DNA of 64,000 nucleotides from Mytilus californianus (lineage: Eukaryota): positions 93,930,001-93,994,000 of the forward strand of contig NW_026262745.1 in the NCBI RefSeq assembly GCF_021869535.1. Direction: 5' to 3'. Shown here in pieces: positions 4,470 through 64,000 of the stretch. The notes below the pieces were generated by a model. It was not told the origin of the DNA. It made no database searches and saw only the letters and a program-made list of their open reading frames with translations. Position numbers and translations under genes: made by a program. Each line of letters starts with the position of its first letter. Within the stretch, counting starts at the first letter, position 1.

Positions 4470-5960
4470 AAAAAAATTGAGAATGGAAATAGGGAGTATG
4501 TCAAAGAGACAACAACCCGACCAATGAGCAGACAACAGCCGAAGGCCACCAATGGGTCTTCAATGCAGCGAGAAAATCCCGCACCCGGAGGTGGTCCTCA
4601 GCTGGCCCTAAATAAAATTGTGTGCTAGTTCAGTGAAAATGGACGTCACACTAAAATCCAAAACATATAAATGAACTAAAATTAAAAAACATACAAGACT
4701 AACAAAGGACAGAGGCTCCTGACTTGGGACAGGCGCAAAGATCCGGCGGGGTTAAACATGTTTTGTGAGATCTCAACCCTCCCCCTATACCTCTAGTCAA
4801 TGAAGAAAAACGAAACACATAGCAATACGCACAGTAAAACTCAGTTTAAAAGAAGTCCGAGTCCGATGTCAGAATAGGTAACAAAAGAAACTAAGCAAAA
4901 TGACAATGATACATAAATGAACAAAGGACTACTAGCAGTTACTGACATGCCAGTTCCAAACCTCAATTAAACTGATTGAAAGATTATGTCTTCATCATAT
5001 GAAAATCAAGTACAATCCCTCCCATTAGGGGTTTAGTATCATACCATCATACAATATATGAGAAGAACATAACCCGTATAATGCCAACAACTGGTTTTAG
5101 AATAAATGTGTTTATTTCCGATGCAAAGACCCTATGAGTGAATCAATATATACCAAAATATGCAATCCTTAATGACTTGACAACAGTATCGTAACTATAT
5201 TCTTTCCGAATAAGTCTGTTTAAAGGTTTGGTTAGCTTTTGAGGTGAATGCCGACATTTTTGTGCTTTGTAAAGAATATTAACATAAAATATTGGATGTG
5301 AAATACCTGAACGTATAAGATGTCTGCATGTTGATTTATATTTACGAATGATATCCTTGCACCGATGATAAAATTTAGTAAATGTTTTGACTAGTTTGTG
5401 ATATCGAAAACCCTGGTGTAATAATTTTTCAGTAATACAGAGATTTCTTTCGTTGAAATCAAATACGTTGTTACATACACGAGCGAATCGAACAAGTTGA
5501 GATATATAAACACCATAAGATGGCGACAAGGGAACGTCACCATCTAAAAATGGATAATTAACAATTATTATAGGAAATGAAAAATCATCTCTTTTATCAT
5601 AAATTTTGGTATTAAGTTTCCAGTGTTCATTGTTAGTAATAGCTTTATTTAAAGTCAGTTCGGCAGGATAAATATCTTTAGTATACATACTGAAGTCGTC
5701 ATTTTTGAGAGCCAATATATCATCTAAATATCTAAAAGTGTTATTAAATTTTTGAATCAGATGTTGTTTCGATGGGTCTTTACAGATTTTAGTCATAAAT
5801 TGTAACTCATAACAATACAGAAACAGGTCCGCAATAAGTGGCGCACAGTTAGTCCCCATGGGAATTCCGATAACCTGACGATATACGGAATCTCCATAGC
5901 GAACAAAAATGTTATCTAGTAAAAATTCAAGGGCAGTTATAGTATCTTACAGATTACACA
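4470..5960 (-). mobile_element. 5'-truncated Penelope-like retroelement: defective RT C-terminal half (ORF 5143-5859) plus about 670-nt 3' region
   Basis: Motifs GIPMGTNCAPLIADLFL, FRYLDD, IYDKRDDFSFPI and SYGVYISQLVRFAR are typical of PLE reverse transcriptase. The expected FLD motif before KLNTKIYDK is missing, indicating an internal deletion. Confidence 0.85.
4711..4794 (-). ncRNA. Twister-ribozyme-like motif, P5-type permutation, in the PLE 3' region
   Basis: Minus strand reads AGAGGT-ATA-GGGG-GAGGG-[TTGAGATCTCACAAAACATGTT]-TAA-CCCC-GC-CGGATCTTTGCG-CCTG-TCCCAAGT-CAGG-A-GCCTCT. This matches the twister core (UAA, P2, T2, P3, P4, L4 UCCCAAGY, GAGGG). P1 is non-canonical. Confidence 0.75.
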
Positions 5961-26590: not shown

Positions 26591-29347
26591 CAGTCAGACC
26601 CTACAGGTCGTGCCTCTTCAAATGTGATATGTCTAAAAACAAGAGCAATTTTTTGTTGATCCCCGACACAATTTCATGTTACTATTATAGTATATTTGTA
26701 CAACTATTGTTACCTAGCATACGAAAGATAACGGACTTCGATAAGTCGGAGATATTAATAATAAAACCACACATTTCTCTTAACAGGTAGGCCACTTGAA
26801 TTTTATGTTTGAACAAATAAGACTTATTCATTTAGGTAGCTTTAGATTTATTGAATATAGAAAACCCACTTCTATTCGTTAATTCGTACTATTGAGTTGA
26901 TCAGAACCATTTTAAACCAGACATACGATCGATAGTAGTATTTTGAGGTGAACGCGCTCTTGGCATGATAAATTTGTAAATATTCATGAATTGTTATGAA
27001 ACTTGGACAAAAGCTAATCTTCAAGATTAAGAAATCGTTTGGATAATTACATTTGTTTTCTGTGTTTATCTGATAATTGGACTTTCTTTTTACAGTCAAC
27101 TTTACACTTTTACACTGACAACAATTATCGCAGACAAGACACAGGGCTCCACGGAACCGTTTTCGAATTGTTTTGTATGCATTGCAAATACATGAGTGTA
27201 CATGTATGAACTATACCTGTTTGAATGGTTTTACACTAGTCATTTTTGAGCCCTTTATAGCTTGCTGTTCGGTGTGAGCGAAGGCTCCGTGTTGAAGGCC
27301 GTACTTTGAACTATAATGGTTTACTTCTACAAATTGTGACATGGATGGACAGTTATCTCATTGGCACTCATACCACATCTTCTTATATCTATGAACTGAT
27401 ATATGAACAAAACGATTGGAAAGGTCGCTAGGTCTGACCAAAAACCCCCAAAAAATAACACTCCCACTATTCATGCAGGAAAAAGTGTTGTTTGGCGTAC
27501 AATTTACACTCTAAGGGTTCTTTAAATTTTGATATTTGAAATGGTGGAATATTAAAACATTGTTATTCCATATACGATAGCAAACGGAAAATCTTTCAAT
27601 CAGCTGACTCGATGCGCGACTACAGGAGAATTTATTTTTCATACATTTAACCAGGACTATTTTGCGCGGTTTTAGCAGTATTTGGATAAGTTCTCTTGTA
27701 GAATTGTCGGAAAATGATAGACTTAATGAAAATTTTGTTATTGAGTTTTATGGGAATAAAACATAAAAATCATCACACGAATTACCGAAAGATATGATTC
27801 ATATATTGTACAGTACGACAAACCACGACAGACCACGACAACCAACAACACCCGACTCATCCGAAAAAAAACAACCCCAAACAATCAAACAAACAACAAC
27901 AAGCTACACATGGTCCAGATAACCAGACAAGGTATAGGCACACAATGTGGTGGGGTTAAACTAGTTTTACGTGCACATACCCCTCACCATCTGCCTATTT
28001 AGGCCAGTAAAACTCCTTATTGAAAAAGATTTGTCAAGTGGACCTACCAACAGGATTCATTTTTCTGTCGTTAAACATGGTTTACATTACCTGAGCTGTA
28101 TTTGGCAAAACCTTTTGAAATTGGCCCTCAATGCTCTTCAACTTCGTACTTTAGTTGGCCTTTAACTTTTTTGATTCGAGCGTCAATGATGATTCTTTGT
28201 AAACGAAATGGGCGCCTGGTATTCAAAATTATAAGCCTGGTATCTTTATAAAACAAAGACGATGTAGCAAGATTTTCTGAGTTGATTCCAATTTTATTCA
28301 AATAACGCGGAAGGTCTGCAGTGTGGTTTCAAAGTTTATATTTGTTCCCCCTTTTCTAAATGCAAAATTCTTTTATTCTTAGAAAATGGAACAAAACAGA
28401 ACCAAACTAAATTCAAGGTAAGAACATGTAACAATAAAAAGATGTGGTATAATTGCCAATGAGGGAGGCAAATCTCAACCAGAGACCAAATGACGTAGAA
28501 GTATAAGCAATTATAGGTCGCCGTGTGGCCGTCAACAATGAGCAAAACCCATACCGAACAGCAAGCTATAAAAGGCCACGAACAAGCATACATCACATCT
28601 TGTCCTTTTGGATTATTTGTGGTTACTTGCCTCTATCATTAACAATCCTTAACGCATGTGATCTTTTTGATTTTATGTTTTTAAATTGACATTTCACGTT
28701 TGAAGTGATGTAAGATCATTTAAATAAAATATGTAAAATTAACTCGTCGAAAGAAACACTTTCACAGAAACTGTTAGTACTGTGTTTTAATTATTCGCCC
28801 TATGCTTATCTGTACTAAGATCCATCCCCTGCATGGGTGGGTAGTGATTTTTTAGAGGGTGCAAAAAGCTTCTTATGTTTGAGTGTCTGTTCGTCTGTGA
28901 CCATTTAACTGGACATTATTAATGATACTTTGAGTGTACTAGGTTTTAAAGTTTTGAGTAGTAACTAAAGTTGAACAAATTCGGCACTAAGCTAGTTAGG
29001 AAAATTTTCTTGTCAAAGATGAGGGTTTTGCGAATTTTATCTTGTTGTATTATAATATTTTAAAATAATATAATCTAATATCATCACTCTTTATATGAAA
29101 TCATGAAATATAAATATAAGATTAATAAAAAATATATTTGAAATGAAATGATTCGCCAATTATTTCTTTAAATTTTAAATTTTCGTGATCTGTTAAAAGG
29201 GTGAATTTTGAGAATTAAATCTTATTTTTTGTTTGACTATAGATGTCATGATTTTAAATATTTGTCGTTTTTATAATTGTTACTCATTTGAACTTGGATT
29301 AACACTTTACTTCGTCAATGCATTCTTACATTTTATTTTCGTTTCAG

Positions 29348-37700: not shown

Positions 37701-40437
37701 AAGTTAACGAAATATAGTCTGATTAATCATTATACAGTCTTAATTAAAACCAAAAACAAACAAAAAACAAAAGTGCAAGAAAAGGGGGGGGGGGGGGGGG
37801 GGGGCGTTCGACTGCAATCCTAATTGACGAGGATTACCAGTTTGTCTATCGAAGGTCAGTGGTTCTCTTCGGGCACGCCTGGCTTCCTCCACCAATAAAA
37901 TCTTGCCGCCACAATAAAGCTTACTGAAGTGGTGTTAAACCCCAACAATCTATCAATCAATATAGATTAATATTATGCAAACACAAAACAAAATAAAACA
38001 AGTACTCTTGAGAATCGTTTTGCTTAGACCAAAGCACAAACAGCTTTTTATTTTCATATCATGTGACAGTTAGTGCAAGTTTTTTTGGTACTTTTTCCTT
38101 ACTATATTTTAAAGCAGAAAGTTGAATGCCTCCAACTCTACATAATTTATCGCAAGACTTATGAAATTGTACCTGGTACCCATGGCACAGTAAGACTGTG
38201 ATTGAGGGGTTAAGGAGTTAAAGAGCATCTTAGAAATCTTACTGCTTCAGCTGCCTCTCTCATAAACTGTTTTGATGGATCGTCCCAAATGGCTGGAACT
38301 GTTATAACAAAGTATAAATCGTCATCTTGTAAGGCATTTCTCAGACGTTCCTGTATTTTCTTCAATAGGTGGTTCTTTAAGTATTCTATGGCAAGGCTAA
38401 ATACTTTAAGTGCCTGCATTGGTTTGTCTGCCACATCATTGATCTCTGTTGTTCTGGTAACTCTCTGAAAAAATATCAAAATGATTCCAATTTTTGAAAT
38501 ACAAAAATAAAGTCTTTCGAACGACGTTCTTTTCTTTGAGGTAGATCATGTATCCGACAGTTATTTAGTTTATAAGGATACACGAAGCTAGAATTGTTCA
38601 GAAAACTACTTTTTCTAAAGTCTAGCGGTCAGTATAACAAGTTGAATTTGGTTGATTTATGAAGGCATTTACGCACTTAGACCTCCAACTTGGTGACAAA
38701 AGGGAAGTAACTCTTGCTCAAATTGTGTCAAGCGAAACCTACCTGTATTTCATTTCTTTAAAAAAGGAAGAATCATTTGAATCATTAGAATTGAGTCCCT
38801 TCTCGGAAATTTCCTGTAGATTACAGATCTTTGATAGTCTATATTAAATTTCGTTCTGCTTTTCTAAACTTGCCATAATTTAGAGCCTAATATATTGTAT
38901 AGACATTTTTCTGTTATTGACCTCTAGATGTGTTTGTTTTCGTGTCGTTGGGTTGCTTATTCGTTGACGTGAATCCCATGTCTCCTTTTATTAATTTCAT
39001 TACAACTCAAGGTCAATGTTCATAATGCACGATTTTTATAATCTTCATTTAGGATTGATTTTCAAGGTCAAGAGCCAAACTGATGTCAAACGTTTAGTTC
39101 AAAGCATAAGAATGCAAATAGATAATCGACAATCGACTCAAATAAAAATGGCCCCTTATATCAGATGTCAACCAGAGATTCAAGGTCAAAAAAGAGAGGT
39201 GAAAGGTACCAAAGGGATATTCAAACTCAAAAGTCTAAATTAAACTGACAACGCCCGAGCTAAAAAAGAAATAAGACCAACAGACAAACAACAGTACACA
39301 AAACACAACATAGAAAACTAAAGACGAAACAACACGAACCACTCCGGAAGGGTAAGCAGATCCTGCTCCACATGTTGCACCCGTCGTGTTGATCATGTTA
39401 CATTTGTTGTAGTACAAAGATACAGACTATTCGTTTAACGGTGCTAATTAAACATCAGTTAATTTGTTTTTCCTTTAAATTTTCATAATAGGTACTTTTT
39501 TGTTAAGTTGGTGATTGGTTGAAGTTTTTTTTAGCCACCAAATACTGTCACAAAAGTGCGTATGAAAGGAAATCGATGCTACTGTAACACAAAAAAAAAC
39601 CTAAATTTATGACGGTAATTGGAAAATACAGATGTGACAATTAGTTGTTAAAAGTTAAAATAAGAAGATGTGGTATGATTGCTAATGAGACCACAACTCT
39701 CCACAAGAGACCAAATGACATAGAAATTAACAACTATAGGTCACCGTACGGCCTTCAACAATGAGCAAAACCCATACCTCACTGTCAGCTATAATAGGCA
39801 CCGAAATGACAAATGTAAAACAATTCAAAATAGAAAAATAACGGCCTGATTTATGAACAAAATAATGAACGAAAAACAAATATGATATATAGCAACAAAC
39901 GACAACCACTGAAGTACAGACGCATACAGAATGTGGTGGGGTTAAACTAGTTTGAAAGCGCCAACCCTCCCCCTAACCTGGGACAGTGGTGTAACAGTAC
40001 AACATACAAACAAATTATAAAAATCAGTTGAAAAGAGCTTCACTCATCAGATCGATACAAAGCAGAAATACATCTAACAAAAACTCAGACCGGAAGTGGC
40101 AGACGGTACTTATACATCTCCACAACAAAACAAAAAAAAAAACCACAAAGTACAGATCTGAGAGTACTCGCAGTTACTGACAGCTACTTTTGTACTTATT
40201 TCAATGTAAAAGCTTAAACTTTGCATACAAAAAAGATTTCCAAAATTAATTTTACATATTTATCAGGACAGCACTTCGCTTACATATAAGACTCGTCGTT
40301 GGCGCTCGAGAAAAAAAAAGAGATAAAAGACCAAATAATCACAACGAAGTTGAAGAGGAATTTTTAATCAAATTTTTTCAAAGGTTATAGGAAACCTGGA
40401 GCGGCTTTGGTTGTCGATGTCTTAGGTATAAAAAACT

Positions 40438-43544: not shown

Positions 43545-44066
43545 ATAACTGCAAGTACTCTAAGATCTGTACTAAAGTGTCATTTTGTTGTTGGGATGTA
43601 CAAGTACCCGTCCACGTCCACTCTGTGTTTTTGTTAGATGTATTTCTATTTTTATCCATCTGATGAGTTAAGCCTTTTGCAACTGATTTTTATAGTGTGT
43701 TCTTATGTTGTAATGTTACACCACTGTCCCAGGTTAGGGGGAGGGTTGGGCGCCCGCTAACATGTTTAACCCCGCCACATTCTGTATGTGCCTGTCTCAA
43801 GTCAGGTGCCTGTAATTTAGTGGTTGTCGTTTGTTGCTGTGTTAGATATTTGTTTTTCGTTTATTATTTTGTAAATAAATTAGGCCGTTGGTTTTCTCGT
43901 TTGAATTGATTTACATTTGTCATTTCGAGGCCTTTAATAGCTGACTATGCGGAATGGGCTTTGCTCATTGTAGAAGGCTGTACGGTGACCTATAGTTGTT
44001 AATTTCTGTGTCATTTTGGTCTCTTATGGAGAGTGTCTCATTGGCAATCATACCACATCTGTTTTA
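43545..44066 (+). mobile_element. Abundant ~520-bp non-coding retro-like element with twister-like core; mostly 5'-truncated or partial copies at about 11585-11650, 12790-12910, 13826-13955, 14032-14200(-), 24745-24862, 27225-27390, 28430-28592(-), 36418-36494(-), 44600-44960(-), 46315-46472, 46485-46545(-), 50420-50560, 54335-54435(-), 54520-54610 and 62090-62420
   Basis: Shared 3' end GAAGGCCGTACGGTGACCTATAGTTG...GTCTCATTGGCAATCATACCACATCT with variable 5' extent, the pattern expected of target-primed retrotransposition. Confidence 0.8.
43730..43812 (+). ncRNA. Twister-like motif (P5-type) with two point changes
   Basis: CAGGT-TA-GGGG-GAGGG-[TTGGGCGCCCGCTAACATGTT]-TAA-CCCC-GC-CACAT-TCTGT-ATGTG-CCTG-TCTCAAGT-CAGG-T-GCCTG. 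L4 has TCTC instead of TCCC, and the A after P4 is T. Confidence 0.65.
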
Positions 44067-47000
44067 TAATTATGATCACTGTGGAACTTCTTAGATTAAT
44101 CCACCACTAAGACCCTCAAAAGATACTGAGAAAAGTGAACAACATAAAGAAAAACCATTCAACTACTTAATATCGGTATTACAGTCAACAAAAAAGACAC
44201 ATGCAAGAGGGTCTAGATAGAGTATAATGGGCAACAAAAAAAAAAAAAAAAAAACAGAATAGAGATATATAGGCATAACAAAATAGAATAATTGGGGACT
44301 TAAATATAAACAATAGACAACAATTGGCAAAAAACATACAAAAAAATAGAGAAAAAGAAAGAACCCCATCCAGACCATCGTGCATGTAATCAACAGTATT
44401 AAAGATTGTTTTGAAGATTTTGAAAGTTAAACTTTGTTCAAAATACTTAATTTGTTGTTTCAATAATCATACCGTTCTACACTCTAATATCGGCCGCAGT
44501 ACTTCAAAGTTAGAAACAATCTAAAAATGTTTGGATATTTATAGCACCTGTACCTCTGATATTAAAGAAGTGCATATCTTTCTTTTTTAATGCACCAATG
44601 AGACCCTCAACAGATAATAATTGATTTGTGATTGTTTTACGCCGCACCAGCACAGCACAACAATAAATAACGGTCTAATTTATACAACACACTATATACG
44701 AAAATCAAATATGACAGACATGGACAAACGACAACCACTGAATTACAGGCTCCTGAATTCGGACAGGCACATTAAACCTACGACGGGGTTAAACATGTTT
44801 GTGAGTGCTGAACAACAAACCACCAACCCTCCAACCCTACCGGGGACAGTGGTTTAACATGACAATATAAGAACAAGCTGTACAATTCAATTCAGTTGCA
44901 AATGGCTTAACTCAATAGATCAGTAAGAAGCACAAACAAACCAACTATTATATAACATAAAAACAATAAACACAAAGTACAGATACACGAGAGATGATCC
45001 GGTCCATAACTTTCGATATCATAAGCAAACATTTCAATCAAAGTTATAAACTTATGTTGAAAAACAAGGTTGAAAATAATTAAAAATACCTTGCTTTGTT
45101 GAAGAAATGATGTCTTGGACGTCTAAATGAGAGAATGATTTTCACCTGTCGCCATGTTCGTCGAAAAAGCATCCAGGAAGTAAAATTGAAATGTCCATAA
45201 TAGACATTATGTTTATTGTGAAGGTCGTAAAATTTAAATAATAATAAAAAAAATATACCAAATGTGTGTACAGGCAATGTATATATGCAATGTATTGATT
45301 GTTTATCTATTTCCAGCAATTTTGGTCTTGTAAGGATATATTTTGCATAATTAATAATATTTGTTTAGGAAGTAGGACATTTATTTTTAATACGGTTTCA
45401 ATGCTTCAAAAACAGGTACTTGTTTGGAAATTGCATTCTTTTTATGAAAATTTAATGCAAATATAAAATACGCATTGCCTCGCTTATGCTTCTCTCTTTT
45501 AAAGCATCCATTTGCAGAGTTGCGTGTCAGTATACTCTGCCTCCCCCTTTCAATCTCCAATAGCAAATAGTTATTTATATTTCAATGCGATCTACGTGTA
45601 AATGAAAGAGGCGTGATTCTCTGGTTAACACAACATAAGGTACAGGAAAACCACCCGTTGCTTGTCACAGTTCCGCTAGCAATGTTATAAAGTAAAGATT
45701 CATTTATTTCATATTTGCGACATACATGTATCTATATATTACATGAATATACATGTCCATTTTATAACCATTCGGAACCTACAGCTTTTACTGTCCAAAA
45801 CGATGATAAAACCCTAAACACTTCTTGTCATTTAAATATAGATATTTATTTTTATTTTTACACTTGACCCGACGATCGATCGATCAAATAGTATACATAG
45901 TGACGTCGCAATTTTTGTAATCATTGTTTGTAAATCATGCGATCCAAGGCTACGTACGGCCGGATACGGAAACCGGATTAGAATCTATGAATTTTAAATA
46001 ATTTGTTATGTCTATTTTTCGATTTCATTACAAAAATATAAAATTCATTATAACGAATGAAATCTGTCAAAAGGAACTTGTAATATACACCGTTCTGTAA
46101 CTAGAACAAATTCTTAAAACATGTATGCACTAATGAATTCTTTAAAATTTGTGAAAATTTTAAATTCCTAATAAATATTTTTTTTTTATTTCAGATTTAA
46201 TACAAAATTAAAAAGCTGTTAAAACGAATTAAAATATTTAATTTCGAAATATATAGGTCCCTTTTTTTTTGGCTTCGTGAAAAGCAGACGTTTGTCTTCA
46301 AAGCAATATAAACATTTTACATTTGTCATTTCGGGGATTTTTATAGCTTACTATCCGGTATATGGGTTTTGCTCATTGTGGCACGGTGACCTTTAATTAT
46401 TAACTTCTATGCCATTTGGTATCTGGTGGAGAAATGTCTCATTGGCAATCATACCACATTTTCCTATTTTTATATGTATATAAAATAAGGAGATGTGGTA
46501 TGATTGCCAATGAGACAACTATCCGGCAGAGACCAAATGATATATGCCCATATTTGGCCCTAAACTTAAATTGAAAATAGCAATACATGATCTTGCTCTT
46601 AAACTACTAAGATAACATATTTTTAGAAAACAAAAAACTTTTTTTACATTTTTAAATAGGAGTTACCAATGGCAACAAACCATGACGTTTATTGGTATAT
46701 TTTTTGAAATTTCTTGATTTTTCTTGATTGGTATCAACTTTTGAGCAAATTTTGGATGGCAAAGTATTGGGACACCAAAAACACATACTCGATGGGATTA
46801 TGCTAATAGCTTTAATGAAAAATATTTGTTTTATAACTTTTGTTACTAAAATGGATGGAATACTTCGAAAATCAGCATCCTGCCTCATTCTTGAAATTAT
46901 GCGCATATGATGAAGTAAATTTGATAGTATTTTACATTATTAATATTGTCTAACTTATCTTTATATTTATTTTTATGCATTTCAATAAGTTATGATCAAA

Positions 47001-47840
47001 TTTGAGTGAGGTCAACAAAACAAAACAAAAACCATTTTCTTTGGCAAAAAATGTGTCTTAACGCCCTTTCTCCTCTATTGAGTTACATCAATTTTTTGGT
47101 TATAATTGGGACCATCCACTTCACAAACACTGCGTTCAAAAGTACCTTTGAAATTTTATTATCTGAATACAGAATAACGTCTGTCGTTGAAATTTTACCA
47201 CTTTGATCTGAGCTAGATTAAAACGGGTTTCAACTGTCCGTGATATTTTGTTATGTCCAACTTGTCTCGTACTGTATGTGGCAGACAAGTTGTCTATGGA
47301 CAATAAAAAACGATTCAATATGACAGTCTCGGTGTGTGGAAAAGAGTACAATCTAGTAGTGTTGGTTTCAAATAAGAAAAGGGATATTCAATATTTTCAA
47401 ATGGAGATCGAGTTCTGTAAACGAAAACGTGAGCTCGTAAACCAGTAGATTTCATTGTATTTTCAAATTGTATTGTTTGTTCAAATCTAGGAATGACAGA
47501 GCGTGCACATATCTCCTTTGTTTGTGTCTGTATAACATGTACATTGTATGATGGGTATGTCGATCGTTACAAGATTTGTTTTCGTCCAAAACACTCACGA
47601 AATATTTGCCACTGGACGTACAAGGCAAATAATTAATCAAATCCACGCGAATATCACGTGAAAACAGTTCTCGTTTGAAGTGAAATTCACGTGAAGTTCA
47701 TGTGAGTGAAATTTTCATGTGCAAATTAAAGTTTTTTCTACCATACATTTGTAGGTCACCAGCGGCTTCTGGTTGAAATGGTTCATAATTCACATTGAGT
47801 TATTTCCCTTATATTATTATTTACTTCCTATTTACGAACT

Positions 47841-50800
47841 ATGGCAAAAAGTACAAAACAAAATGAAAAAGGAAAAGACAGGTGAGTAAAATGAATGATT
47901 GAAGTATAATTTGCATTTTGAATGGTTATTTTTAGACATATTGTAAAGCTTTAGATCTTAAGATCACAAACGCTAGTATATTCATGGTAGTTTAGTACTC
48001 GTTATACATGTGTAACTATGTTAATCTGGTGTCACAGTTTTCCAACTTATCATACAATAGTTTTTAAATTGATCTTTATTCTATAATTCAGTATTCAGTT
48101 ACAAAAAATAGGATAATCAAATATAAATTCAACTGATTATATTTGTTTTAAAGATGTCATTCTCGAAACTGAAAGTAGTTTCCTTCCTTCTCTTATAGTT
48201 GTGTCTAAACAAGAAAAGAGGATCAATATATTTTTTTATCTTACCTCCTATACATTTCTAGGAATAGGATTGGTTAAAAGCAACCGCGTGGAGATCGTGT
48301 ATATTCCATATTGGGTTAGTAGTCGGGGCTAATTTCAATACACGGTTAGTAGTGGTGTTACGTCTCTTTATAAAAACAACACGGTGTTGAGGAGAAATCT
48401 TAAAGGTTTCAACAGACGAAGAAATTGATGATGAACGATTGAAATAAATTAATAAAACACATTTAAAGCTAACATGTTGTAATTGTTGGCATTTGTTTTT
48501 GTATAGACCAATGGAAGAAGGTTCTTAATACTAACGGTATTGAAGACTTGATCACTTTGATAGGCCACTAGTCTAAATACCACATGTTTAGATAGTCGAT
48601 ACGATAAATTCGTTACATAGTGTGTTAGTGACCTAATACGATATTTATAGATTATCTATGGTTATCTGAACGAGATTGATTTTCTCGCTTGAGCCGGTAC
48701 GGCGAAAGCGAGAAAAGCAATCGATTTGAGATGACCAATGGTAATCTGTTTATCGCTATTTTACCTATGAAGACGTTGTTAATTTCCTTGACAACGGCAC
48801 GTGTTCCCTTAGTTTCTAGCGATAATTTTCATATCACTCGACTCCATTTTCATATCACTCGACTCCGCTGAGAACGGAAATTATCAGTCAACAAGATCAA
48901 AGGAAAAATTCTTAAAATAGCGATAAACAAATTTATATGGCGTTAGTAAATTCCATATGGGGATTCCAGCTTCGCTCTCACCCCATATATATCGTATAAG
49001 GTCACTAGCACACTCTGTAACTAATAATATTATGCCCCATTTTTCACTGATGTAAAGTGATTTAATATTTAAAAGTTTATTAAAAATTTTGCAAGGATAA
49101 AAAGAAAGACCCATCGCTTGCGATCATAACTATCAGTCGATTTTACCAAAATCTCTGTATAAAGATGATAAAGGGACGTGATTTCTGTGTACAAACAATT
49201 GATTTAATGCTTTTTAACACAAAGTTGACTGCTGTACCCCGATTTTTGATATTTTTACCTATTATGTCTGTTTGTTTTGTTCACACATTGTTGTCAATAT
49301 AATGGAATTTTATGAGACTGTCATACAAGTGAGAGGTTTAGCTAGCTATAAAACCAGGTTTAATCCACCATTTTATACAAAAGAAAATGCCTGTACCAAG
49401 TCAGGATTATGACAGTTGTTATCCATTCGTTTGAGCTTTTGATTTTGCCATTTGATTAGGGACTCTCCTTTTTGAATTTTCCTCGGAGTTCGGTATTTTT
49501 GTTATTTTACTTTTTAATATCCTAAGACGACGTAACAGTCGTAACCAGAAACAATTTGTTTTCCATGTTTGGTATCCAATTTGAAACAAAATTAAATTTC
49601 ACGTGTAACACCCCCCTCCCCAAAGAAAAAAAAGTTGAAAAACAAAAAAAGAAGTTTACTGTACATAGTGATACATTAACATATTATGACACATTAATAT
49701 TTTATAATATTTATTTTTTCAGCCATGAAATGGGTTCTGCCAAACTTTTTGTGGCTGCAATTGATTTTGGAACTACCTATTCTGGGTACGCATTTTCAGC
49801 CCGAAATTCTCCCGAAACCTTATACACGTGCGACTGGAAAAATAATAATTTACTGTCCAGGAAAGCTCCGACGTCCGTTCTTATTGACAATGACGAACAG
49901 TTTGTAGCATTTGGGTTTGATGCAGAAAACAAATATATGGCTAGTCTCGAGAATGATTCGGATTCAGATTCAGATGACAGTGACGAAGAGAAAAATCCTT
50001 CATGTAAAGCCGTATATCGTTATTTTAGTCGGTTTAAGATGGAACTACACGATAAGGTAATTTGAAAGGGTTTATATATTCACATATACTGTTTATTGAT
50101 TTTTTTTTTTATAAATGACCAATGGGAAATGAGTTCAGTTGAAATTGTTCCCTTTTTTTATCAAAGTTTTTTATTACTTCGATCAGCTCTTATCAAAAAA
50201 TGACTGTAGAAATATGGTTTCGTGTCGTTTAGTTTTTGCATGCCTGTTTCAGCAATTGCTATTTCCTGTCGTACATTTTTAAAATTTACAGATAACATTT
50301 ATAGAGCTAATTGAAGGCACGGACGGTATTGCAATCAAAAGCCAGAATGTTTCTTGCATTTCTTGTGACCGATTATGATTTTTATAATTTTTCTACCATT
50401 ACGAAGTTGGTCTTGTTCGCAAATTAGTTGTTTTGTTATAAATTACTAGGCCGTTAGTTTTCTCGTTTGATTTGTTCGACATTTTTCATGGCGGAGTCTT
50501 TTATAGCCAATTATACGGTACGAGTTTTCCCCATTGTTGAAGGCCGTACGGTTGCCTGTATTCTTATATTGACTAATCTTCTAAATTGGAATAGTCTCCA
50601 GTGCTTGGGATTCGATCCTAAAATAACTTGTATAGGATATAGTCTTTTTCCTTATTTCTTTAACGGTCTGGCTCTCATCGATGTATATTTTAAACATACT
50701 TGAATTAATGATTTCGTCTTTTTGATTTATTCGAAAAAAAGTATATGCATTGTGATATAAAAGTAAAATTTAACATTAGTGTTAAAAGGACTGAAAAAAA

Positions 50801-53800
50801 ACCAGATAACTTAGTTTCTGAGATATGAACTTGGAAATTATTTAAACGTGATATATATCAATAATTACATTACATGTATGTTTCATTATTATATGTTATT
50901 TTGATTGGCTATCAGCAATCTCGCGTCATTATGAAATTTACCTTCATTTCAAAAAAATGAAATGTAACATTTATGACGACACGAGCTTCCACAATAAAGT
51001 GCTAAGGTAGATAAGAGAAAAACTTGATAGAAATCGTGTTTTCATGATCCTAGCAAAATTGTAATTATAATTATTGAATGCTTCTTTTAGTAATTTTATA
51101 GGGTCGTAAAAACGTTGACCGTGCGCACATTTTTAGCTCACCTGGCCCGAAGGGCCAAGTGAGCTTTTCTCATTAATTGGCTTCCGTCGTCCGTCGTCCT
51201 GCGTCCTGCGTCCGTCGTCCGTAAACTTTTACAAAAATCTTCTCCTCTGAAACTACTGGGCCAAATTTGACCAAACTTGGCTACAATCATCATTAGGGTA
51301 TCTAGTTAACAAAATGTGTCCGATGACCCCGCCAACCAACCAAGATGGCCGCCATGGCTAAACATAGAACATGGGGGTAAAATGTAGATTTTGGCTTATA
51401 TCTCTGAAACCAAAGCATTAAGAGTAAATCTGACAGAGTAAAACTGATTATCAGGTCAAGATCTATCTGCCATGAAATTTTCAGACAAATCTGACAACCT
51501 GTTGTTGGGTTACTGCCCCTGAATTGGTAATTTTAAGCAAATTTTGCAGTTTTTGGTTATTATCTTGAATATTATTAAAGATAAAGATAAACTGTAAACA
51601 GCAATAATGTTCAGCAAAGTAAGATCTACAAATAAGTCGTCATGACCAAAATTGTCAGTCGACTTCTTTAGGAGTTATTGCCCTTTATAGTCAATTTTTA
51701 ACAATTTTTCGTAAATTTTTGTAATCTTTTACAAAAATCTTCTTCTCTGAAACTACTGAGACAAACTTAATAATACTTGGCCATAATCATTATTAGGGTA
51801 TCTTGTTAAAAAATGTGTCCGATGACCCCGCCAACCAACCAAGATGGCCGCCATGGCTAAAAATAGAACATAGGGGTAAAATGTAGATTTTGGCTTATAT
51901 CTCTGAAACCAAAGCATTTAGAGTAAATCTGACATGGATAAAACTGATTATTAGGTCAAGATCTATCTGCCCTGAAATTTTCAGACAAATCTGACAACCT
52001 GTTGTTGGGTTGCTGCCCCTGAATTGGTAATTTTAAACAAATTTTGCAGTTTTTGGTTATTATCTTGAATATTATTATAGATAGAGATAAACTGTAAACA
52101 GCAATAATGTTCAGCAAAGTAAGATCTACAAATAAGTTGTATGATCAAAATTGTCAGTCGACCCCTTTAGGAGTTATTGCCCTTTATAGTCAATTTTTAA
52201 CAATTTTTCGTAAATTTTTGTAATCTTTTACAAAAATCTTCTTCTCTGAAACTACTGAGACAAATTTAACCATACTTGGCCATAATCATTATTAGGGTAT
52301 CTAGTTTAAAAATATGTCCGATGACCCCGCCTTCCAACCATCATGGCCGACTTGGTTAGAAATAGAACATAGGGGTAAAATTCAGTTTTTGGTTTATATC
52401 TCTGAAACTAAAGCATTTAGAGCAAATCTGACAGTGGCAAAAATGTTCATCAGATTTAGATTTATCTGCCCTGAAATTTTCAGACGAATCCGACAACCCG
52501 TTGTTGGGTTGCTGCCCCTGAGTTAGTAATTTTACAGAAATTTTGCAGTTTTTTATTATTATCTTAGATATCATTATAATATCTAATATCTAATACTATT
52601 AATTATGATTTTAACCTTATGTTACATGATTTCCAAAGCATCAGTAAATACAGGTGAGCGACACAGGCTCTTGAGAGCCATTAGTTAGATTGAAGCGCTA
52701 CCGCGCTTCATACAAAATGTACTTCGGTCAACGTTTTTACACCCCAATGAATTTACAAAAAGAAGCATTCAATTCTTAAATGAATTATTATGCATGGGTT
52801 ATATTGATATCGGGGAAGGGTAATGGATTATTATGCACTGGGATATCGACATCGGGGAAGGGTAATAAATCATTATGCACGGGGATATCGACATCGGGGA
52901 AGGGTAATGGAATATCATGCACGGGGATATCGACATCTTGGTAGGGTCTTTAAGTGATTGTCTTGGTCTACTGCAATCGACCTCAATTTTTCTTTGTCTG
53001 TTTTATTTTCTATAAAGGATGATTTTGAACAAAGCGGCATAACTCAGACCTTAATATGTTAAAAACTTCTGTCGGATTTTATTCGTATTTGAACACATCA
53101 ATAGAAAAAAAAACAATAATAAAAAAAGTCTATGCCTTTTGATATTCATAATATTCGCAAAGGAATCAAAATATAATCATTATGAATGTTTGATGCAGAT
53201 AGCTATTCATGAAAACCATTTTGCAATTCCCTTTTCACTATTGAACATTTTGTAGGAATGCCTACTTAGTGCAGCCTATTGTGTCTGTTTGGGTTGCTTA
53301 CCCAATTTTGTCAAAATTAAATATCTTCTTTGCCAATCAACCTCAAAAGAAGTAGAAAGCTTAGGGTCCTTTTTTAAACAGGCATTAGAACTAAGGACAG
53401 GGGACTCTTGATTTATTTATATAAATATATATAGATAGATTGTTTTGCTTTTTGACTTGTATATGTTTAATGGGATATGTTTTCCTATGGTTTTGTTTTT
53501 GAAATGTCTTTTGTGTATTTGCATTCATATAATTTGTCACAAACTTATTGTTTAGAGTTTATATGACAATAAATATTTGAATTGAATTGAATTGAATTGA
53601 AATATAATGGAACTATAAACAACTGTCATACAGGTTCGAGGTTTAGCTAGCTATAAAATCAGGTTTAACTCACCATTTTCTTCGAAAAATGCCCAGCTAC
53701 GACTGGTGGTTAGATTGGTCAACAAACGATTCAATTGATATTGTAAAATATTAAGAGTGACTATTTTTCGTAATGAAAAAAAAAAAAAACTGAAAATAAC

Positions 53801-59720: not shown

Positions 59721-60302
59721 AGAGATTATATGGAGGTACTGGACTTAATTCCTGTGCCCGAAAGTAAAAGCTATCTATATATATATAAGTACCGCTAGTT
59801 ACATCTGACCTGTTATGACATTGATAAAGCCTGAGAACTACTAGTATATGGGAGGATTGCTGTTATTGCCTATCGCAATCAACAGTATATCCTAGAGCAC
59901 CGTCCCTTGGTGTCTCCAGCAGATGAACAAATTTCCATCTTTATAGATAATAATTTAAGTATGTTCAAGTTCAGACTTTATTATTATATTTTTATTTTTA
60001 TTTTATTTATATTTTTTTTTGTTTTTTATTTGTGCACTGCTGGACATAGAAATAGTAATAATAATAAGGAAGGAAGAAAAAAAAATACTCAAGAGTTCTT
60101 TTAATGTATTTTTGTTATTAATGCTTTTTTCATTTGTCTATTATAATATCTGTCACGTTATATACTGTACAATGTCTCATGTTTGTTGCTTAAAAAAAAG
60201 TAAAATCACAAAAATACTGAACTCCAAGGAAAATTCAAAAAGGAGAGTCCCCAATCAAATGGCAAAATCAAAAAAACAAACACATCAAACGAATGGATAA
60301 CA

Positions 60303-60402
60303 ACTGTCATATTCCTGACTTGGTACAGGCATTTTCTTATGCAGAAAATGGTGGATTGAACCTGGTTTTATAGCTAGCTAAACCTCTCACTTGTATGACA
60401 GT
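60303..60402 (-). ncRNA. Twister-like motif, second variant, inverse copy
   Basis: Same architecture as 49317-49416. 8-bp P3 CATTTTCT/AGAAAATG; the triplet at the predicted cleavage site is CAA. Confidence 0.65.
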
Positions 60403-60978
60403 CACATCAAATTCCATTATATTGACAACGATGCGTGAACAAAACAAACAGACACAATAGGTAAAAATGTCAAAAATAGGGGTACAGCAGTCAACATTGT
60501 GTTATCATCTTAATCACTATAAAAACAAACAAATGTAACGAAGAAGCACAAATAGGCATACATCAAATTTAACATCCAATTATGCTTATATTATACGATT
60601 TTATTTATCTATGTAAAATCCACCCATAAAGGATGGAAGGTTTTAAGTACTGGCGTAAAATCGTATTATATTATCATAATTGTTAATTGTAAATGCCCCC
60701 CGTGGGACCCTGATTGGAATAATAAAATATTTGATTTATATGTATACAAGATCCTTTAATTTAACTGCCTCCCTATAATATTTCATTTGACAATTTCAAC
60801 AGGTAAAAATTAAACACGTATGCATTTTGCATACACATTTCTGCGGACACTTGACTTTGCTGTCAGTCAGAAATGGGTAAGATTACAGTCAATGAAATCG
60901 ATTAAATTACAATTACTTTGTCAATTGTACGATTAAATTAAATTAATGATTACACCATTTATCAAAGTAACTTATTAA

Positions 60979-61960: not shown

Positions 61961-64000
61961 AGTGGTCCATAAGTGACTGGTTGTTTGGCAAAATTATTTC
62001 ATACTGGTTTTGACTTTGATATCTTTTTCAATGGTTTATGATTTAACTATTTGATAATTTGGTTTTCATGGTCTAATTTTTGTCTAAAATCTGTTAGTAT
62101 TCATACTTTGATGAGTTGAGCCTTTTTCAGTTAATGTTTTATTGTGTGTCCGTTTATGTTGTATTGTTACACCACTGTTTCAGCTTAGTGTAAAGATTGG
62201 CGCCAGATAAAACGTTCAACCCCGCTGCATTTGTTTGCACCTATCCTAAGTCAGGAACCTGATCTTCAGTGGTTGTCGTTTGTTGATGTGGTTCATAAGT
62301 GTTTCTCGTTTCTCGTTTTTTATATAGATTAGACCGTTGGTTTTCCTGTTTGAATGGCTCCGTGTTAAAGGCTGTACTTTGACCTATAATGGTTTACTTT
62401 AAATTGTGACTTCAATGGTCACGACTAAATACATATTCCAGTACATGCATGCAATTAAATTCGTAGGCAGTCTAACGCATCTTATGGACGTATATTGCAA
62501 AGACTAACTGAAACATCGATGTAGTCCGTGTTTTCACAATGCTTAACTTGATGTCCCAGTCCACTTTAGATAAGCGTTCTACCGATACTAGAAAGTCTGC
62601 TTCATATCTTCATCTGTTTGATTAATGTTGACACATATGGTCGAATTCAAACTAGAATCTTTGACAAATGTGATGATTTCAAACTTTTTTCAATAGTCAA
62701 TTTCCTATTTCTCAGCTGTAACATAACTTCTGCCCATTGTTTGGCGTTTTTATGGCCGTTGAATGTCGGGCAACTTTTTTTTCACATTGCCCAGCCTGAG
62801 GACTTCCGTTGACGATGAGATATGTAACAGGGTCCAATCCAAATTTACTAACCTTCATTCCGGTCAACAACTATTACAATACATACCAATTGCATTTATT
62901 TTTTTTAAGTGGTTCTCGTCCTGAACATGTATGAAATATTTGCCCCTAATGTCAAACAAGCTTCAATTAATCAATTGTCTAAAAAATCTTAAAATACGAG
63001 CTTATTACTGCACATGAAGACATAACCGACTGTTTTTTTTCTCACTTGGCAATGCAATTAAATATCAAATTTCTATGACTATCTACATTTTTTAAACATT
63101 TTGTTTCAAACCAAAGACTTGTATGGTCATGGTTTTTGTCGGAAATTTATGATAACGAGATTGTGGAATACGTTTGCATACCCTCTTACCATGGGATGGA
63201 AGAGGTGGTTTTATACACAAACGAGCCATCATTCTAAAGGCAAATTAATTGTATGTATAGTGTGCAGCTTGCATTTCTGTACAATACAAGAGGTAGACAT
63301 GCTGCTGACATCATTATCTCAATTGAATATGAAAGGAAACGGCGAAATGGCCTTATCAGACTAACATAGGTCACAAAGATTATGTAAAAAGTCATGCACG
63401 TAGGATAAAGTTGAAGATGAAAAACATTTTATATGTCAATGTCCGCTATATAATCTTTTGAGAAATGAGTTATATTATACAATTTCAATAAGTTGTAAAA
63501 AATTCGAAAAGTTTAAACACATGTGCCAAGTTTTAATTGGCTTTTTAATCAAGAAAAACCTAGAGGTATTAGAAATTATTGCAATTTATATTAATAAATG
63601 TTTTGAACTCCGAAAACTATCAATATAGTACAGATATGTTTTTATGTAAGCCTTAAGTATATTTGCCGGTTAATATTACATATAACTGTTATGCTTTTTA
63701 CTTATAAATGTATACTTATATGCTTATGGCTCTGGTATGGCGATGGTTTAGCATTTTATAATTGAGATGATTATATTCATGTTTATACATATGATTTTCA
63801 ATACTATTGTGTCAATTATCTAAATCATTGTAATAAATTATTTTGCTCTTCATGGGTCCTTTAATTGGAATAAAAATATCTCATCTCATCTTATCTTATG
63901 TTATTAGTAAATGTATACTCCATCGGGGGTGAAGTTGGTATATTGCTGCTAAGTTGATGAAGATATATCAATTGGACCAAATCAGAAAAGCTTGGATTGT

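What the first reader, a model, noticed from the sequence alone, without database searches (positions are those of the whole stretch)
49317..49416. Second, unrelated repeat family has the same twister fold with compensatory pseudoknot changes, and sits sense in an HSPA12 intron
Seen: flanks and stems differ from the 4.7-kb and 43.7-kb copies, yet both pseudoknots co-vary. L4 UCCC / GAGGG becomes UACC / GAGGU (C-G to A-U in T1). T2 GC becomes AC against the same GU (G-U to A-U). P3 and P5 are different sequences that still pair (6 and 9 bp). P2 is irregular (UCC against GUGA). This is the strongest in-window evidence that the structure, not the sequence, is conserved. The copy lies on the sense strand about 360 nt upstream of the 49723 acceptor. 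Inference: if active, it could cut paralogue-3 pre-mRNA co-transcriptionally at 49361/49362, as intronic HDV-like ribozymes do in CPEB3.
Basis: partly seen in the sequence, partly recalled or inferred. Interest (0 to 1): 0.86.

Follow-up and report, generated by a model that had tools for sequence, protein, structure and literature searches.

The report
Twister-like RNA in intronic repeat
A 100-base stretch inside the first intron of a mollusc heat-shock-type gene has the fold of a twister self-cutting RNA, but it is one worn copy of a jumping-gene family with tens of thousands of copies, and nothing shows that it cuts the gene's transcript.

Summary
The described fold is at 49317-49416 (+), helix for helix: P5 9 bp, P3 6 bp, P4 3 bp, T1 ACC/GGU, T2 AC/GU, irregular P2 (UCC against GUGA), U49361|A49362.

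The stretch is the core of a 5'-truncated copy (49215-49515) of an ORF-less repeat of about 410 bp. I call it family B. Its DNA depth is tens of thousands of times that of single-copy sequence.

The family is not unrelated to the other twister copies. A covariance model built without any family-B sequence finds it at 36 bits (E about 2e-7). It shares their two-palindrome linker in place of P1.

The same module lies 225-332 nt after RT-like ORFs in other genomes. There P5, P3, T1, T2 and both palindromes differ in sequence but still pair.

RNA contigs place the copy in sense inside intron 1 (47882-49722) of an expressed HSPA12-like gene.

No cutting is shown. Spliced mRNA exists. Stranded RNA reads cover the family equally on both strands. 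No read ends pile up at the site.

No Rfam gathering score is reached. P2 is one base short. This copy also has a private P3 mismatch.

This scan has already noted the twister in Naiad-type retroelement tails more than 50 times on other DNA of this genome.

The parts
49215..49515 (+). 5'-truncated copy of the family-B repeat (full length about 410 bp, no ORF, fixed 3' end ...UUUUACUUUUU)
   Evidence: It aligns with 60184-60594(-) and with copies in L030-L036 at 80-91% identity, and the 5' ends vary. Loose read ends mark the 3' boundary at 49515. Summed DNA depth is 2.5-2.7 million against about 35-100 for single-copy bins.
49317..49416 (+). Twister-like module, type-P5 permutation without a P1 hairpin
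   Evidence: The segmentation was checked as contiguous. Leave-family-out CM: 36.1 bits, E 1.8e-7 over 49329-49405. Rfam twister-P1: only 18.3 bits against a gathering score of 67.2.
49317..49325 (+). P5 5' strand ACUGUCAUA; pairs with 49408-49416
   Evidence: 9 Watson-Crick pairs; present in the MFE fold.
49329..49337 (+). P2 3' strand GUGA (49329-49332), GA (49333-49334), T1 3' strand GGU (49335-49337)
   Evidence: GA and the middle G correspond to A46 and G48, which are essential in Osa-1-4 (PMC5113685). That mapping is my inference.
49340..49361 (+). Linker in place of P1: palindrome 1 AGCUAGCU (49340-49347), AUA, palindrome 2 AAACC-A-GGUUU (49351-49361). The last U of palindrome 2 is N-1.
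   Evidence: Every related lineage has two different palindromes at the same places.
49361..49363 (+). Predicted scissile site U49361|A49362, followed by A49363
   Evidence: Position by homology to the twister consensus UAA. The family has C at N-1 in about half of its copies.
49364..49368 (+). P2 5' strand UCC (3 nt) and T2 5' strand AC
   Evidence: The CM alignment puts a deletion in P2.
49369..49389 (+). P3 hairpin CAUUUU/AAAAUG. A49375 is private to this copy (family: C, giving 8 bp).
   Evidence: Nearly all reads of the family show C at 49375, as does the 60.3-kb copy.
49390..49405 (+). P4 CCU/AGG with loop L4 GUACCAAGUC (T1 5' strand ACC at 49395-49397; T2 3' strand GU at 49400-49401)
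49408..49416 (+). P5 3' strand UAUGACAGU
47836..47881 (+). 3' part of exon 1 of the HSPA12-like gene (paralogue 3). In-frame ATG at 47841; donor CAG|GUGAGU after 47881.
   Evidence: Depth arithmetic on RNA contigs X13 record 8 and X9 record 23; sequence; in-frame translation MAKSTKQNEKGKDSHE-MGSAKLF....
47882..49722 (+). Intron 1 (1841 nt, GU..AG); it holds the family-B copy in sense
49723..50056 (+). Exon 2 with the Hsp70-type N-terminus AAIDFGTTYSGYAF
   Evidence: RNA contigs lie on 49720-50057; translation. The last exon matches Pfam HSP70 at 21.1 bits against a cut-off of 20.6.
60184..60594 (-). Second, nearly full-length family-B copy. Module at 60303-60402, C at N-1, P3 of 8 bp.
53601..53693 (+). 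Truncated, decayed family-B-like fragment (module cut after P3)
   Evidence: CM score only 11.9 bits.

Best explanation
The stretch is the ribozyme module of one 5'-truncated copy of a very abundant, ORF-less retroelement family. I call it family B. It is about 410 bp long, has a fixed 3' end and variable 5' ends.

The module is a circularly permuted (type-P5) twister fold without a P1 hairpin. It is homologous to modules that lie 225-332 nt after RT-like ORFs, which are probably Naiad-type Penelope-like elements.

Inferred: in the source elements the fold is kept by selection. It most likely cuts the element's own RNA between N-1 and A1, leaving a 2',3'-cyclic phosphate and a 5'-OH. Pairing of two RNAs through the two palindromes that replace P1 probably helps.

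Shown: this copy is a passenger, in sense, in intron 1 of an expressed HSPA12-like gene.

It carries the family's one-base-short P2 and a private P3 mismatch. I put the chance that it cleaves at all in vitro at about 0.4. I put the chance that it matters for the host gene at well under 0.1.
For: - The fold is present helix for helix.
- A CM built without family B finds the module at 36.1 bits, E 1.8e-7, and finds the 60.3-kb copy too.
- Five lineages (4.7 kb, 43.7 kb, family B, L037, L039) have different P5, P3, T1, T2, palindrome-1 and palindrome-2 sequences that still pair, including T1 UCU/AGA.
- Modules lie after RT-like ORFs that are homologous to window 5146-5859(-).
- T1 and T2 pairs can be swapped for other Watson-Crick pairs with activity kept (PMC5113685).
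- P1 is dispensable and N-1 is not conserved (PMC5408937).
- Rfam's type-P3 consensus has AC/GU in T2 and a U-A outer T1 pair.
- The family is very abundant and has variable 5' ends.
- Among family-B copies the module is 0.93-0.97 identical, against 0.82-0.89 for the flanks.
- The intron position follows from RNA contigs.
Against: - No Rfam twister model reaches its gathering score. Even the canonical-looking 4.7-kb copy gets no twister match at all.
- P2 has 3 nt against 4. Published structural work suggests that changing the number of P2 pairs may disturb the active site (PMC5408937).
- There is no pile-up of read starts or ends at 49361/49362 at 150-210x per strand.
- RNA coverage of the family is equal on both strands, as expected for passenger transcription.
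- None of about 12 family-B copies adjoins an RT ORF. No autonomous partner with the ACC/GGU module was found.
- The excess conservation of the module is partly an ascertainment effect. Most extra copies were fetched through a peptide that spans the module.
- The 'Naiad' label rests on an RT motif read by eye (FRYLDDIL), weak RVT_1 hits (E 0.01-0.04) and a SECIS match just below gathering (32.5 against 35).
Confidence: 0.6

Rival explanations
1. One reading: this copy is an active intronic ribozyme. It cuts the paralogue-3 pre-mRNA co-transcriptionally at 49361/49362 and so tunes the gene's output, like the CPEB3 ribozyme or the intronic hammerheads of amniotes.
For: The copy is sense in intron 1, 361 nt before the acceptor. 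The core nucleotides and both pseudoknots are intact. This copy keeps U at N-1.
Against: - Spliced mRNA contigs are found in two runs.
- No read ends pile up at the site.
- P2 is irregular, and P3 has a private mismatch.
- The copy is one of tens of thousands read from both strands, so nothing marks this insertion as selected.
- Conservation at the orthologous site was not tested.
Confidence: 0.07
2. In family B the fold is catalytically dead. It survives as a structural signal only, for example a handle for the partner reverse transcriptase or an RNA dimerisation element. The one-base deletion in P2 disabled the active site before the family expanded.
For: - All family-B copies share UCC against GUGA, whereas every RT-linked lineage has four P2 pairs.
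- Palindrome 2 is interrupted by an unpaired A only in family B.
- No read-end pile-up is seen.
- The copies contain both sides of the predicted cut, and DNA depth per base is equal on the two sides.
Against: - Single P2 mismatches are often tolerated in Osa-1-4; 33 of 69 helix mutants keep more than 0.8 relative activity (PMC5113685).
- T1, T2, A1 and the L4 core, which matter only for the catalytic fold, are intact in the family consensus and are better conserved than the flanks.
Confidence: 0.25
3. A chance resemblance: an AT-rich repeat that happens to contain GCCUGUACCAAGUCAGG and some hairpins, with no descent from a twister.
For: Rfam scores are far below gathering. The z-score of the MFE fold is modest (-1.4).
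Against: The leave-family-out CM gives E 1.8e-7 over the full model length. The module shares its architecture and linker with RT-linked modules. The pattern occurs 5 times against 0.14 expected.
Confidence: 0.03

Closest known systems
Twister self-cleaving ribozyme, type P5 permutation (Roth et al. 2014; Rfam clan CL00120)
   Same: Same order of elements for an RNA opened in P5. L4 reads GUNCCAAGYC. GA-GGN forms T1 and NC forms T2. AA follows the scissile bond. P3 and P4 are hairpins, and P5 closes the molecule.
   Different: There is no P1 hairpin; two palindromes stand in its place. P2 is 3 nt against 4. The outer T1 pair is A-U. No Rfam gathering score is reached. Cleavage has not been shown.
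Hammerhead ribozymes in the pseudo-LTRs of Penelope-like elements, many active only as dimers (Cervera and de la Pena 2014; Lunse et al. 2016, both cited in PMC6765202)
   Same: A small self-cleaving motif built into the non-coding tail of PLE-type retroelements. A weak or missing closing helix and self-complementary sequence suggest action in pairs.
   Different: A different ribozyme class. Naiad-type PLEs were reported to lack canonical hammerheads (PMC8557442). Family B has no ORF of its own.
Metazoan non-LTR retrozymes and ribozyme-bearing SINE-like repeats (Schistosoma Sm-alpha, mussel retrozymes; PMC7761336, bioRxiv 10.64898/2026.07.22.740005)
   Same: Short, ORF-less, very abundant repeats that carry the ribozyme of an autonomous PLE and are presumably moved by it.
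   Different: Those carry hammerheads and are often tandem, giving circular RNA. Here the motif is a twister, copies are mostly dispersed, and no circular junction was listed in the reads.
Intronic self-cleaving ribozymes with a proposed host role (the CPEB3 HDV-like ribozyme; intronic hammerheads of amniotes)
   Same: Sense orientation inside an intron of an expressed gene.
   Different: Those are single-copy and conserved at orthologous positions. This is one recent copy of a repeat with tens of thousands of copies, and it shows no cleavage signal.
Truncated twister ribozymes at the 5' end of RTE retrotransposons (mentioned as 'in preparation' in PMC7761336)
   Same: A twister-class motif as a built-in part of a retrotransposon.
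   Different: Those sit at the 5' end of LINE-type elements. This module sits in the middle of a short repeat and in the 3' tails of RT-like (PLE-type) elements.

Membership tests
Twister ribozyme (Rfam CL00120: twister-P1, -P3, -P5) | Reaches the curated Rfam gathering score of one of the three models | tested here: not met
   No hit at gathering in the whole window. Best narrow-scan hit is twister-P1 at 18.3 bits against 67.2, E 0.23. The canonical-looking 4.7-kb copy gets no twister match at all. A phage twister reaches 35.2 against 39.9. The models therefore handle these architectures poorly.
Twister ribozyme | Conserved core: A1 A2 after the scissile bond; L4 G-U-N-C-C-A-A-G-Y-C; G-A-G-G in L1 | tested here: met
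   U|AA at 49361-49363, GUACCAAGUC at 49393-49402, GAGG at 49333-49336.
Twister ribozyme | Pseudoknot T1 (3 Watson-Crick pairs) and T2 (2 pairs) | tested here: met
   ACC/GGU and AC/GU all pair. The same states or their equivalents occur in Rfam's type-P3 consensus and in phage twisters.
Twister ribozyme | P2 of four Watson-Crick pairs, extended by a sheared A-G pair | tested here: not met
   UCC against GUGA gives three pairs with a bulged U, in all family-B copies. The A and G of the sheared pair are present. The four-pair rule is taken from PMC5408937.
Twister ribozyme | P1 stem below the active site | tested here: not met
   The 23-nt linker cannot form a hairpin next to the cleavage site; it holds two palindromes. 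P1 is dispensable for catalysis (PMC5408937), so this does not exclude activity.
Twister ribozyme | Site-specific self-cleavage | tested here: inconclusive
   There is no pile-up of read starts or ends in stranded RNA reads at 150-210x per strand. By my estimate this would have shown cleavage of roughly half or more of the sense RNA. It cannot exclude slower cutting or rapid loss of the products.
P1-less P5-type twister module of RT-encoding (Naiad-like) retroelement tails | Matches a covariance model of the module built from other lineages | tested here: met
   Model R1 (4 sequences, none from family B) scores 49329-49405 at 36.1 bits, E 1.8e-7, over the full model length.
P1-less P5-type twister module of RT-encoding (Naiad-like) retroelement tails | Two palindromes between T1 and the scissile bond | tested here: met
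   AGCUAGCU is a perfect palindrome. AAACC-A-GGUUU has 10 of 11 positions self-complementary.
P1-less P5-type twister module of RT-encoding (Naiad-like) retroelement tails | Lies in the 3' tail of an RT-coding element | tested here: not met
   None of about 12 family-B copies in the window and in L030-L036 has an adjoining RT ORF. The longest copy is about 410 bp. Family B would be a non-autonomous derivative.
Naiad clade of Penelope-like elements (for the RT-linked relatives) | N-terminal GIY-YIG endonuclease, CxC linker, C-terminal RT with IFD | not tested
   Only C-terminal RT-like fragments were seen: the motif FRYLDDIL, weak RVT_1 hits at E 0.01-0.04, and HTH_animal clusters. A SECIS-like match of 32.5 bits against 35 lies downstream. 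The label 'Naiad' comes from earlier notes of this scan and from PMC8557442.
Host-domesticated intronic ribozyme (CPEB3 type) | Sense strand of an intron of an expressed gene | tested here: met
   Intron 1 is 47882-49722. The donor and acceptor are fixed by RNA contigs and by depth arithmetic.
Host-domesticated intronic ribozyme (CPEB3 type) | Single-copy and conserved at the orthologous position across species | tested here: not met
   It is a member of a repeat whose DNA depth is tens of thousands of times single-copy depth. The orthologous locus in other species was not examined.
SINE | Internal pol III promoter (tRNA-, 5S- or 7SL-derived head) | not tested
   No tRNA, 5S or 7SL match appeared at the family-B copies in the Rfam scans, but no dedicated search of the 5' end was made. 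The features shared with SINEs are short length, 5' truncation and abundance.

The most novel reading that the evidence does not exclude
Family B is a 'twister retrozyme'. On this reading it is a non-autonomous element whose spread depends on a twister that is switched on when two RNAs pair through the palindromes. Its thousands of sense-strand intronic copies, this one included, then cut host pre-mRNAs when the local RNA concentration is high. That would give the animal a ribozyme layer of gene control, here on an HSPA12-like paralogue.
Probability: 0.05. Interest if true: 0.85.

Novelty: new variant of a known kind. Interest (0 to 1): 0.42.

Why it matters
Twister ribozymes are known, and so are ribozyme-bearing retroelements. 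In the papers I could search, no paper combined the terms twister, ribozyme and Naiad. A P1-less, two-palindrome twister module in Penelope-like tails or their short derivatives is therefore not described there. Naiads were published as lacking canonical hammerhead ribozymes (PMC8557442).

This finding adds an ORF-less family of very high copy number. It also adds another set of pair-preserving changes, which helps to show that the fold is selected.

It also shows that such modules sit in sense inside introns of working genes without blocking them. That fact bears on how fast, or under what conditions, these RNAs cut.

For the HSPA12-like gene itself, the element is most likely just a passenger.

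Tried and rejected
- Rfam at gathering and at E-value thresholds gave no usable twister call for the candidate, the 4.7-kb copy or the phage twisters.
- The viral-contig scan for the core returned mostly a phage gene and true phage twisters. These were useful only as a comparison for T1 and T2. The longer pattern found nothing there.
- The single metagenome scan found one more family-B copy.
- Looking up earlier notes by sequence, and with words about reads or introns, gave nothing.
- The extra copies came from a search with the 46-residue ORF that spans the module. That route biases the sample towards copies with an intact module.
- MAFFT alignments of few lineages misplace P2 or P4. I dropped the 3-sequence alignment and did not run the count of structure pairs on such alignments. 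Pairs were counted on hand-cut segments that I checked against the sequence.
- Pfam gave no significant domain for the RT-like ORFs.
- A search for perfect heat-shock elements upstream of exon 1 found none.
- A hammerhead-core-like string in the tail of L038 has no Rfam match.
- No autonomous element with the family-B module (ACC/GGU, UCC/GUGA) was found in the loci fetched.
- The 5' ends of family-B copies do not cluster at the predicted cut.
Full report
**What is at 49317-49416.** I cut the stretch into the named parts of a type-P5 twister and checked that the parts join without a gap to give exactly these 100 bases.

In order, the parts are:
- P5 ACUGUCAUA
- CAA
- P2 3' strand GUGA
- GA
- T1 3' strand GGU
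- a 23-nt linker
- U49361|A49362, then A
- P2 5' strand UCC
- T2 AC
- P3 CAUUUU/AAAAUG
- P4 CCU/AGG with loop GUACCAAGUC
- AU
- P5 UAUGACAGU

P5 has 9 pairs, P3 has 6, P4 has 3, T1 has 3 and T2 has 2, and all of them pair. P2 is 3 nt against 4 (U-A, C-G, bulged U, C-G). The minimum-energy fold recovers P5, P3 and P4.

**Scores against known models.**
- Rfam gives nothing at gathering in the whole window.
- A narrow scan gives twister-P1 at 18.3 bits against a gathering score of 67.2.
- Rfam is a poor judge here. The canonical-looking 4.7-kb copy gets no twister match at all. Phage twisters with the same core also stay below gathering.
- I therefore built a covariance model from four modules of other lineages, with no family-B row.
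- With filters off, it finds the candidate at 36.1 bits (rough E 1.8e-7, full model length). It finds the second family-B copy at the same score, and six further modules in the window score 30 bits or more.
- The core pattern alone occurs 5 times against 0.14 expected.

**What the element is.**
- The module is the middle of a repeat whose second copy lies at 60184-60594 (-).
- One metagenome hit and a search with the short ORF that spans the module brought in about ten more copies (L030-L036).
- They show a fixed 3' end (...UUUUACUUUUU), variable 5' ends, a maximum length of about 410 bp and no coding capacity.
- In a DNA run the summed depth over the repeat is 2.5-2.7 million, against about 35-100 for single-copy bins. 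This is no exact copy number, but it points to tens of thousands of copies.
- The pattern fits a non-autonomous retroelement. I call it family B.

**Is it unrelated to the other copies? No.**
- Outside the module the flanks differ.
- Inside it, family B shares several pieces with the 4.7-kb and 43.7-kb copies: ACUGUC in P5, the linker AAAAC..GUUUAA, the 17-nt P4/L4 core and CAGU(G)GUUGU after P5.
- The leave-family-out model confirms the kinship.

**Relatives next to RT-like ORFs.**
- The 4.7-kb copy follows an ORF with the RT motif FRYLDDIL (5146-5859, minus strand) and a SECIS-like match of 32.5 bits against a gathering score of 35.
- This ORF has 6930 relatives at E up to 1e-10.
- Loci fetched for two of them, from other assemblies, carry the same module 225 and 332 nt after the stop codon.
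- One 21-kb locus has six modules from two lineages.
- Pfam support for an RT is weak (RVT_1 at E 0.01-0.04; HTH_animal clusters). The label 'Naiad' therefore rests on earlier notes of this scan and on Craig et al. (PMC8557442). I did not test it.

**Covariation across lineages.**

| Element | 4.7 kb | 43.7 kb | Family B | L037 | L039 |
|---|---|---|---|---|---|
| P5 | AGAGG/CCUCU | CAGGU/GCCUG | ACUGUCAUA/UAUGACAGU | GAUCCACA/UGUGGAUC | 16-bp helix |
| T1 | CCC/GGG | CUC/GGG | ACC/GGU | UCC/GGU (outer U.U) | UCU/AGA |
| T2 | GC/GU | GC/GU | AC/GU | UC/GG | CC/GG |
| Palindrome 1 | GAGAUCUC | GGGCGCCC | AGCUAGCU | GGCGCC | GGUACC |
| Palindrome 2 | AAACAUGUUU | UAACAUGUUU (outer pair unpaired) | AAACC-A-GGUUU | AAACCGGUUU | AAAUGCAUUU |

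P3 differs in every lineage and pairs in each.

Two cautions apply.
- The changed T1 pair is the outermost and least constrained one. One lineage has a mismatch there.
- AC/GU in T2 and a non-C-G outer T1 pair form the consensus of Rfam's type-P3 twister. They also occur in phage twisters.

Bench data agree with this. In Osa-1-4, T1 and T2 pairs can be replaced by other Watson-Crick pairs (PMC5113685). P1 is dispensable and the base before the cut is not conserved (PMC5408937).

**What argues against activity.**
- Family B is the only lineage with a three-base P2 5' strand. The review reports four P2 pairs and cites a suggestion that adding or removing pairs may disturb the active site (PMC5408937).
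- This copy also has A at 49375 where nearly all reads of the family, and the 60.3-kb copy, have C. That turns an 8-bp P3 into 6 bp plus a mismatch.
- In about half of the copies the base before the cut is C. That should not matter.

**Conservation inside the family.** Among the family-B copies the module is 0.93-0.97 identical and the flanks 0.82-0.89 (Mann-Whitney p about 1e-4). This suggests constraint on the source elements. Most of the copies were fetched through a peptide that spans the module, so the figure is biased upwards.

**Gene context.**
- The window holds three paralogues of the first coding exon.
- For paralogue 3, RNA contigs of two runs lie on 49720-50057 and break exactly at the acceptor. 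They carry 43 and 26 more letters upstream (table 8).
- Those letters were laid in bin 47782-47980. There, 43 x 7.71 / 199 = 1.67 and 26 x 2.5 / 199 = 0.33, which equal the reported depths of that bin.
- The bin holds CAG|GUGAGU at 47881/47882. That explains the three-base CAG ambiguity at 49720-49722.
- Exon 1 has an ATG at 47841 in frame with the Hsp70-type N-terminus.
- Intron 1 is therefore 47882-49722, and the module lies in it, in sense, 361 nt before the acceptor.
- The last exon matches Pfam HSP70 at 21.1 bits against a cut-off of 20.6.

**RNA evidence on cutting.**
- The raw-read run is stranded. A unique minus-strand piece reads 5.5 against 0.23, and exon 2 reads 0 against 3.4.
- Over the repeat, the two directions are equal (160/152 and 185/209). 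This is what passenger transcription of copies in both orientations gives.
- The tool lists no place at all where molecules begin or end.
- By my estimate, cutting of about half or more of the sense RNA would have passed its threshold. Slower cutting, or fast decay of the products, would not.
- There is no positive control in the stretch.
- DNA depth per base is the same on both sides of the predicted cut. Most inserted copies therefore contain both halves.

**Verdict.** The intronic sense position holds. The proposed cutting of the HSPA12-like pre-mRNA has no support, and several points count against it.

The most likely account is a passenger copy of a non-autonomous relative of RT-coding elements that carry a P1-less, two-palindrome twister module. 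This scan has noted that module more than 50 times on other DNA of the same genome. I found no paper describing it.

Noticed in passing
window 4711-4794(-), 43730-43812(+), 49340-49361(+), 27923-27988(-); L037:11374-11478; L039:11121-11228: In every lineage the place of P1 is taken by two short palindromes of different sequence. The second ends exactly at the base before the predicted cut. Perfect 6-10-nt palindromes cannot fold on themselves, so pairing between two RNAs is the simplest reading. Family B alone has an unpaired A in the middle of the second palindrome.
   Followed up: partly
window 4996-5060(-) and 5146-5859(-): A SECIS-like match (32.5 bits, just under the gathering score of 35) lies between an RT-like ORF (motif FRYLDDIL) and the 4.7-kb twister module. 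This fits the selenoprotein-coding Naiads described in clams.
   Followed up: partly
window 46433-46519, both strands: A hairpin-shaped repeat is hit by several miRNA models on both strands, all far below gathering. Its DNA depth is about 2.4 million, and both RNA and DNA show many 'goes back' joints at 46524>46482. It is probably a very abundant inverted-repeat element.
   Followed up: no
window 44996-45194(-): A unique segment is expressed from the minus strand (5.5 against 0.23 in the stranded run, and present in both RNA-contig runs). It is probably the first exon of the divergently transcribed paralogue 2, whose first coding exon is at 40750-40469.
   Followed up: no
window 47841-47881(+): Exon 1 of paralogue 3 holds an ATG in frame with the Hsp70-type start in exon 2. 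This would add 16 residues (MAKSTKQNEKGKDSHE). Intron 1 may therefore split the coding sequence rather than the 5' UTR.
   Followed up: partly
window 27923-27988(-), 39908-39973(-), 44752-44824(-), 62188-62255(+): Four further decayed twister modules were found by the custom model (30-39 bits). The one at 27.9 kb has its own palindromes (GUGCAC, AAACUAGUUU) and combines AC in T2 and ACC in T1, as in family B, with a four-base P2 strand.
   Followed up: partly
L001, L002, L003, L010, L017, L019, L021, L022, L024 (IMG/VR contigs): Phage contigs carry classical twisters with the same P4/L4 core. The outer T1 pair co-varies (G-C, U-A, C-G), and several lie near tRNA gene clusters. Those I scanned stay below Rfam gathering (L002: 35.2 against 39.9).
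   Followed up: partly
L038:10765-11409: After a truncated RT-like ORF (75% identical to the window's ORF), a tandem duplication holds the hammerhead-core-like string CUGAUGAG...CGAAA twice. Rfam gives no match at E up to 1.
   Followed up: partly
L037 (21 kb of another assembly): Six twister modules lie in 21 kb, all on one strand, from two lineages (T1 UCU/AGA and UCC/GGU). Some sit about 800-900 bp apart, which may reflect tandem or nested insertion.
   Followed up: no
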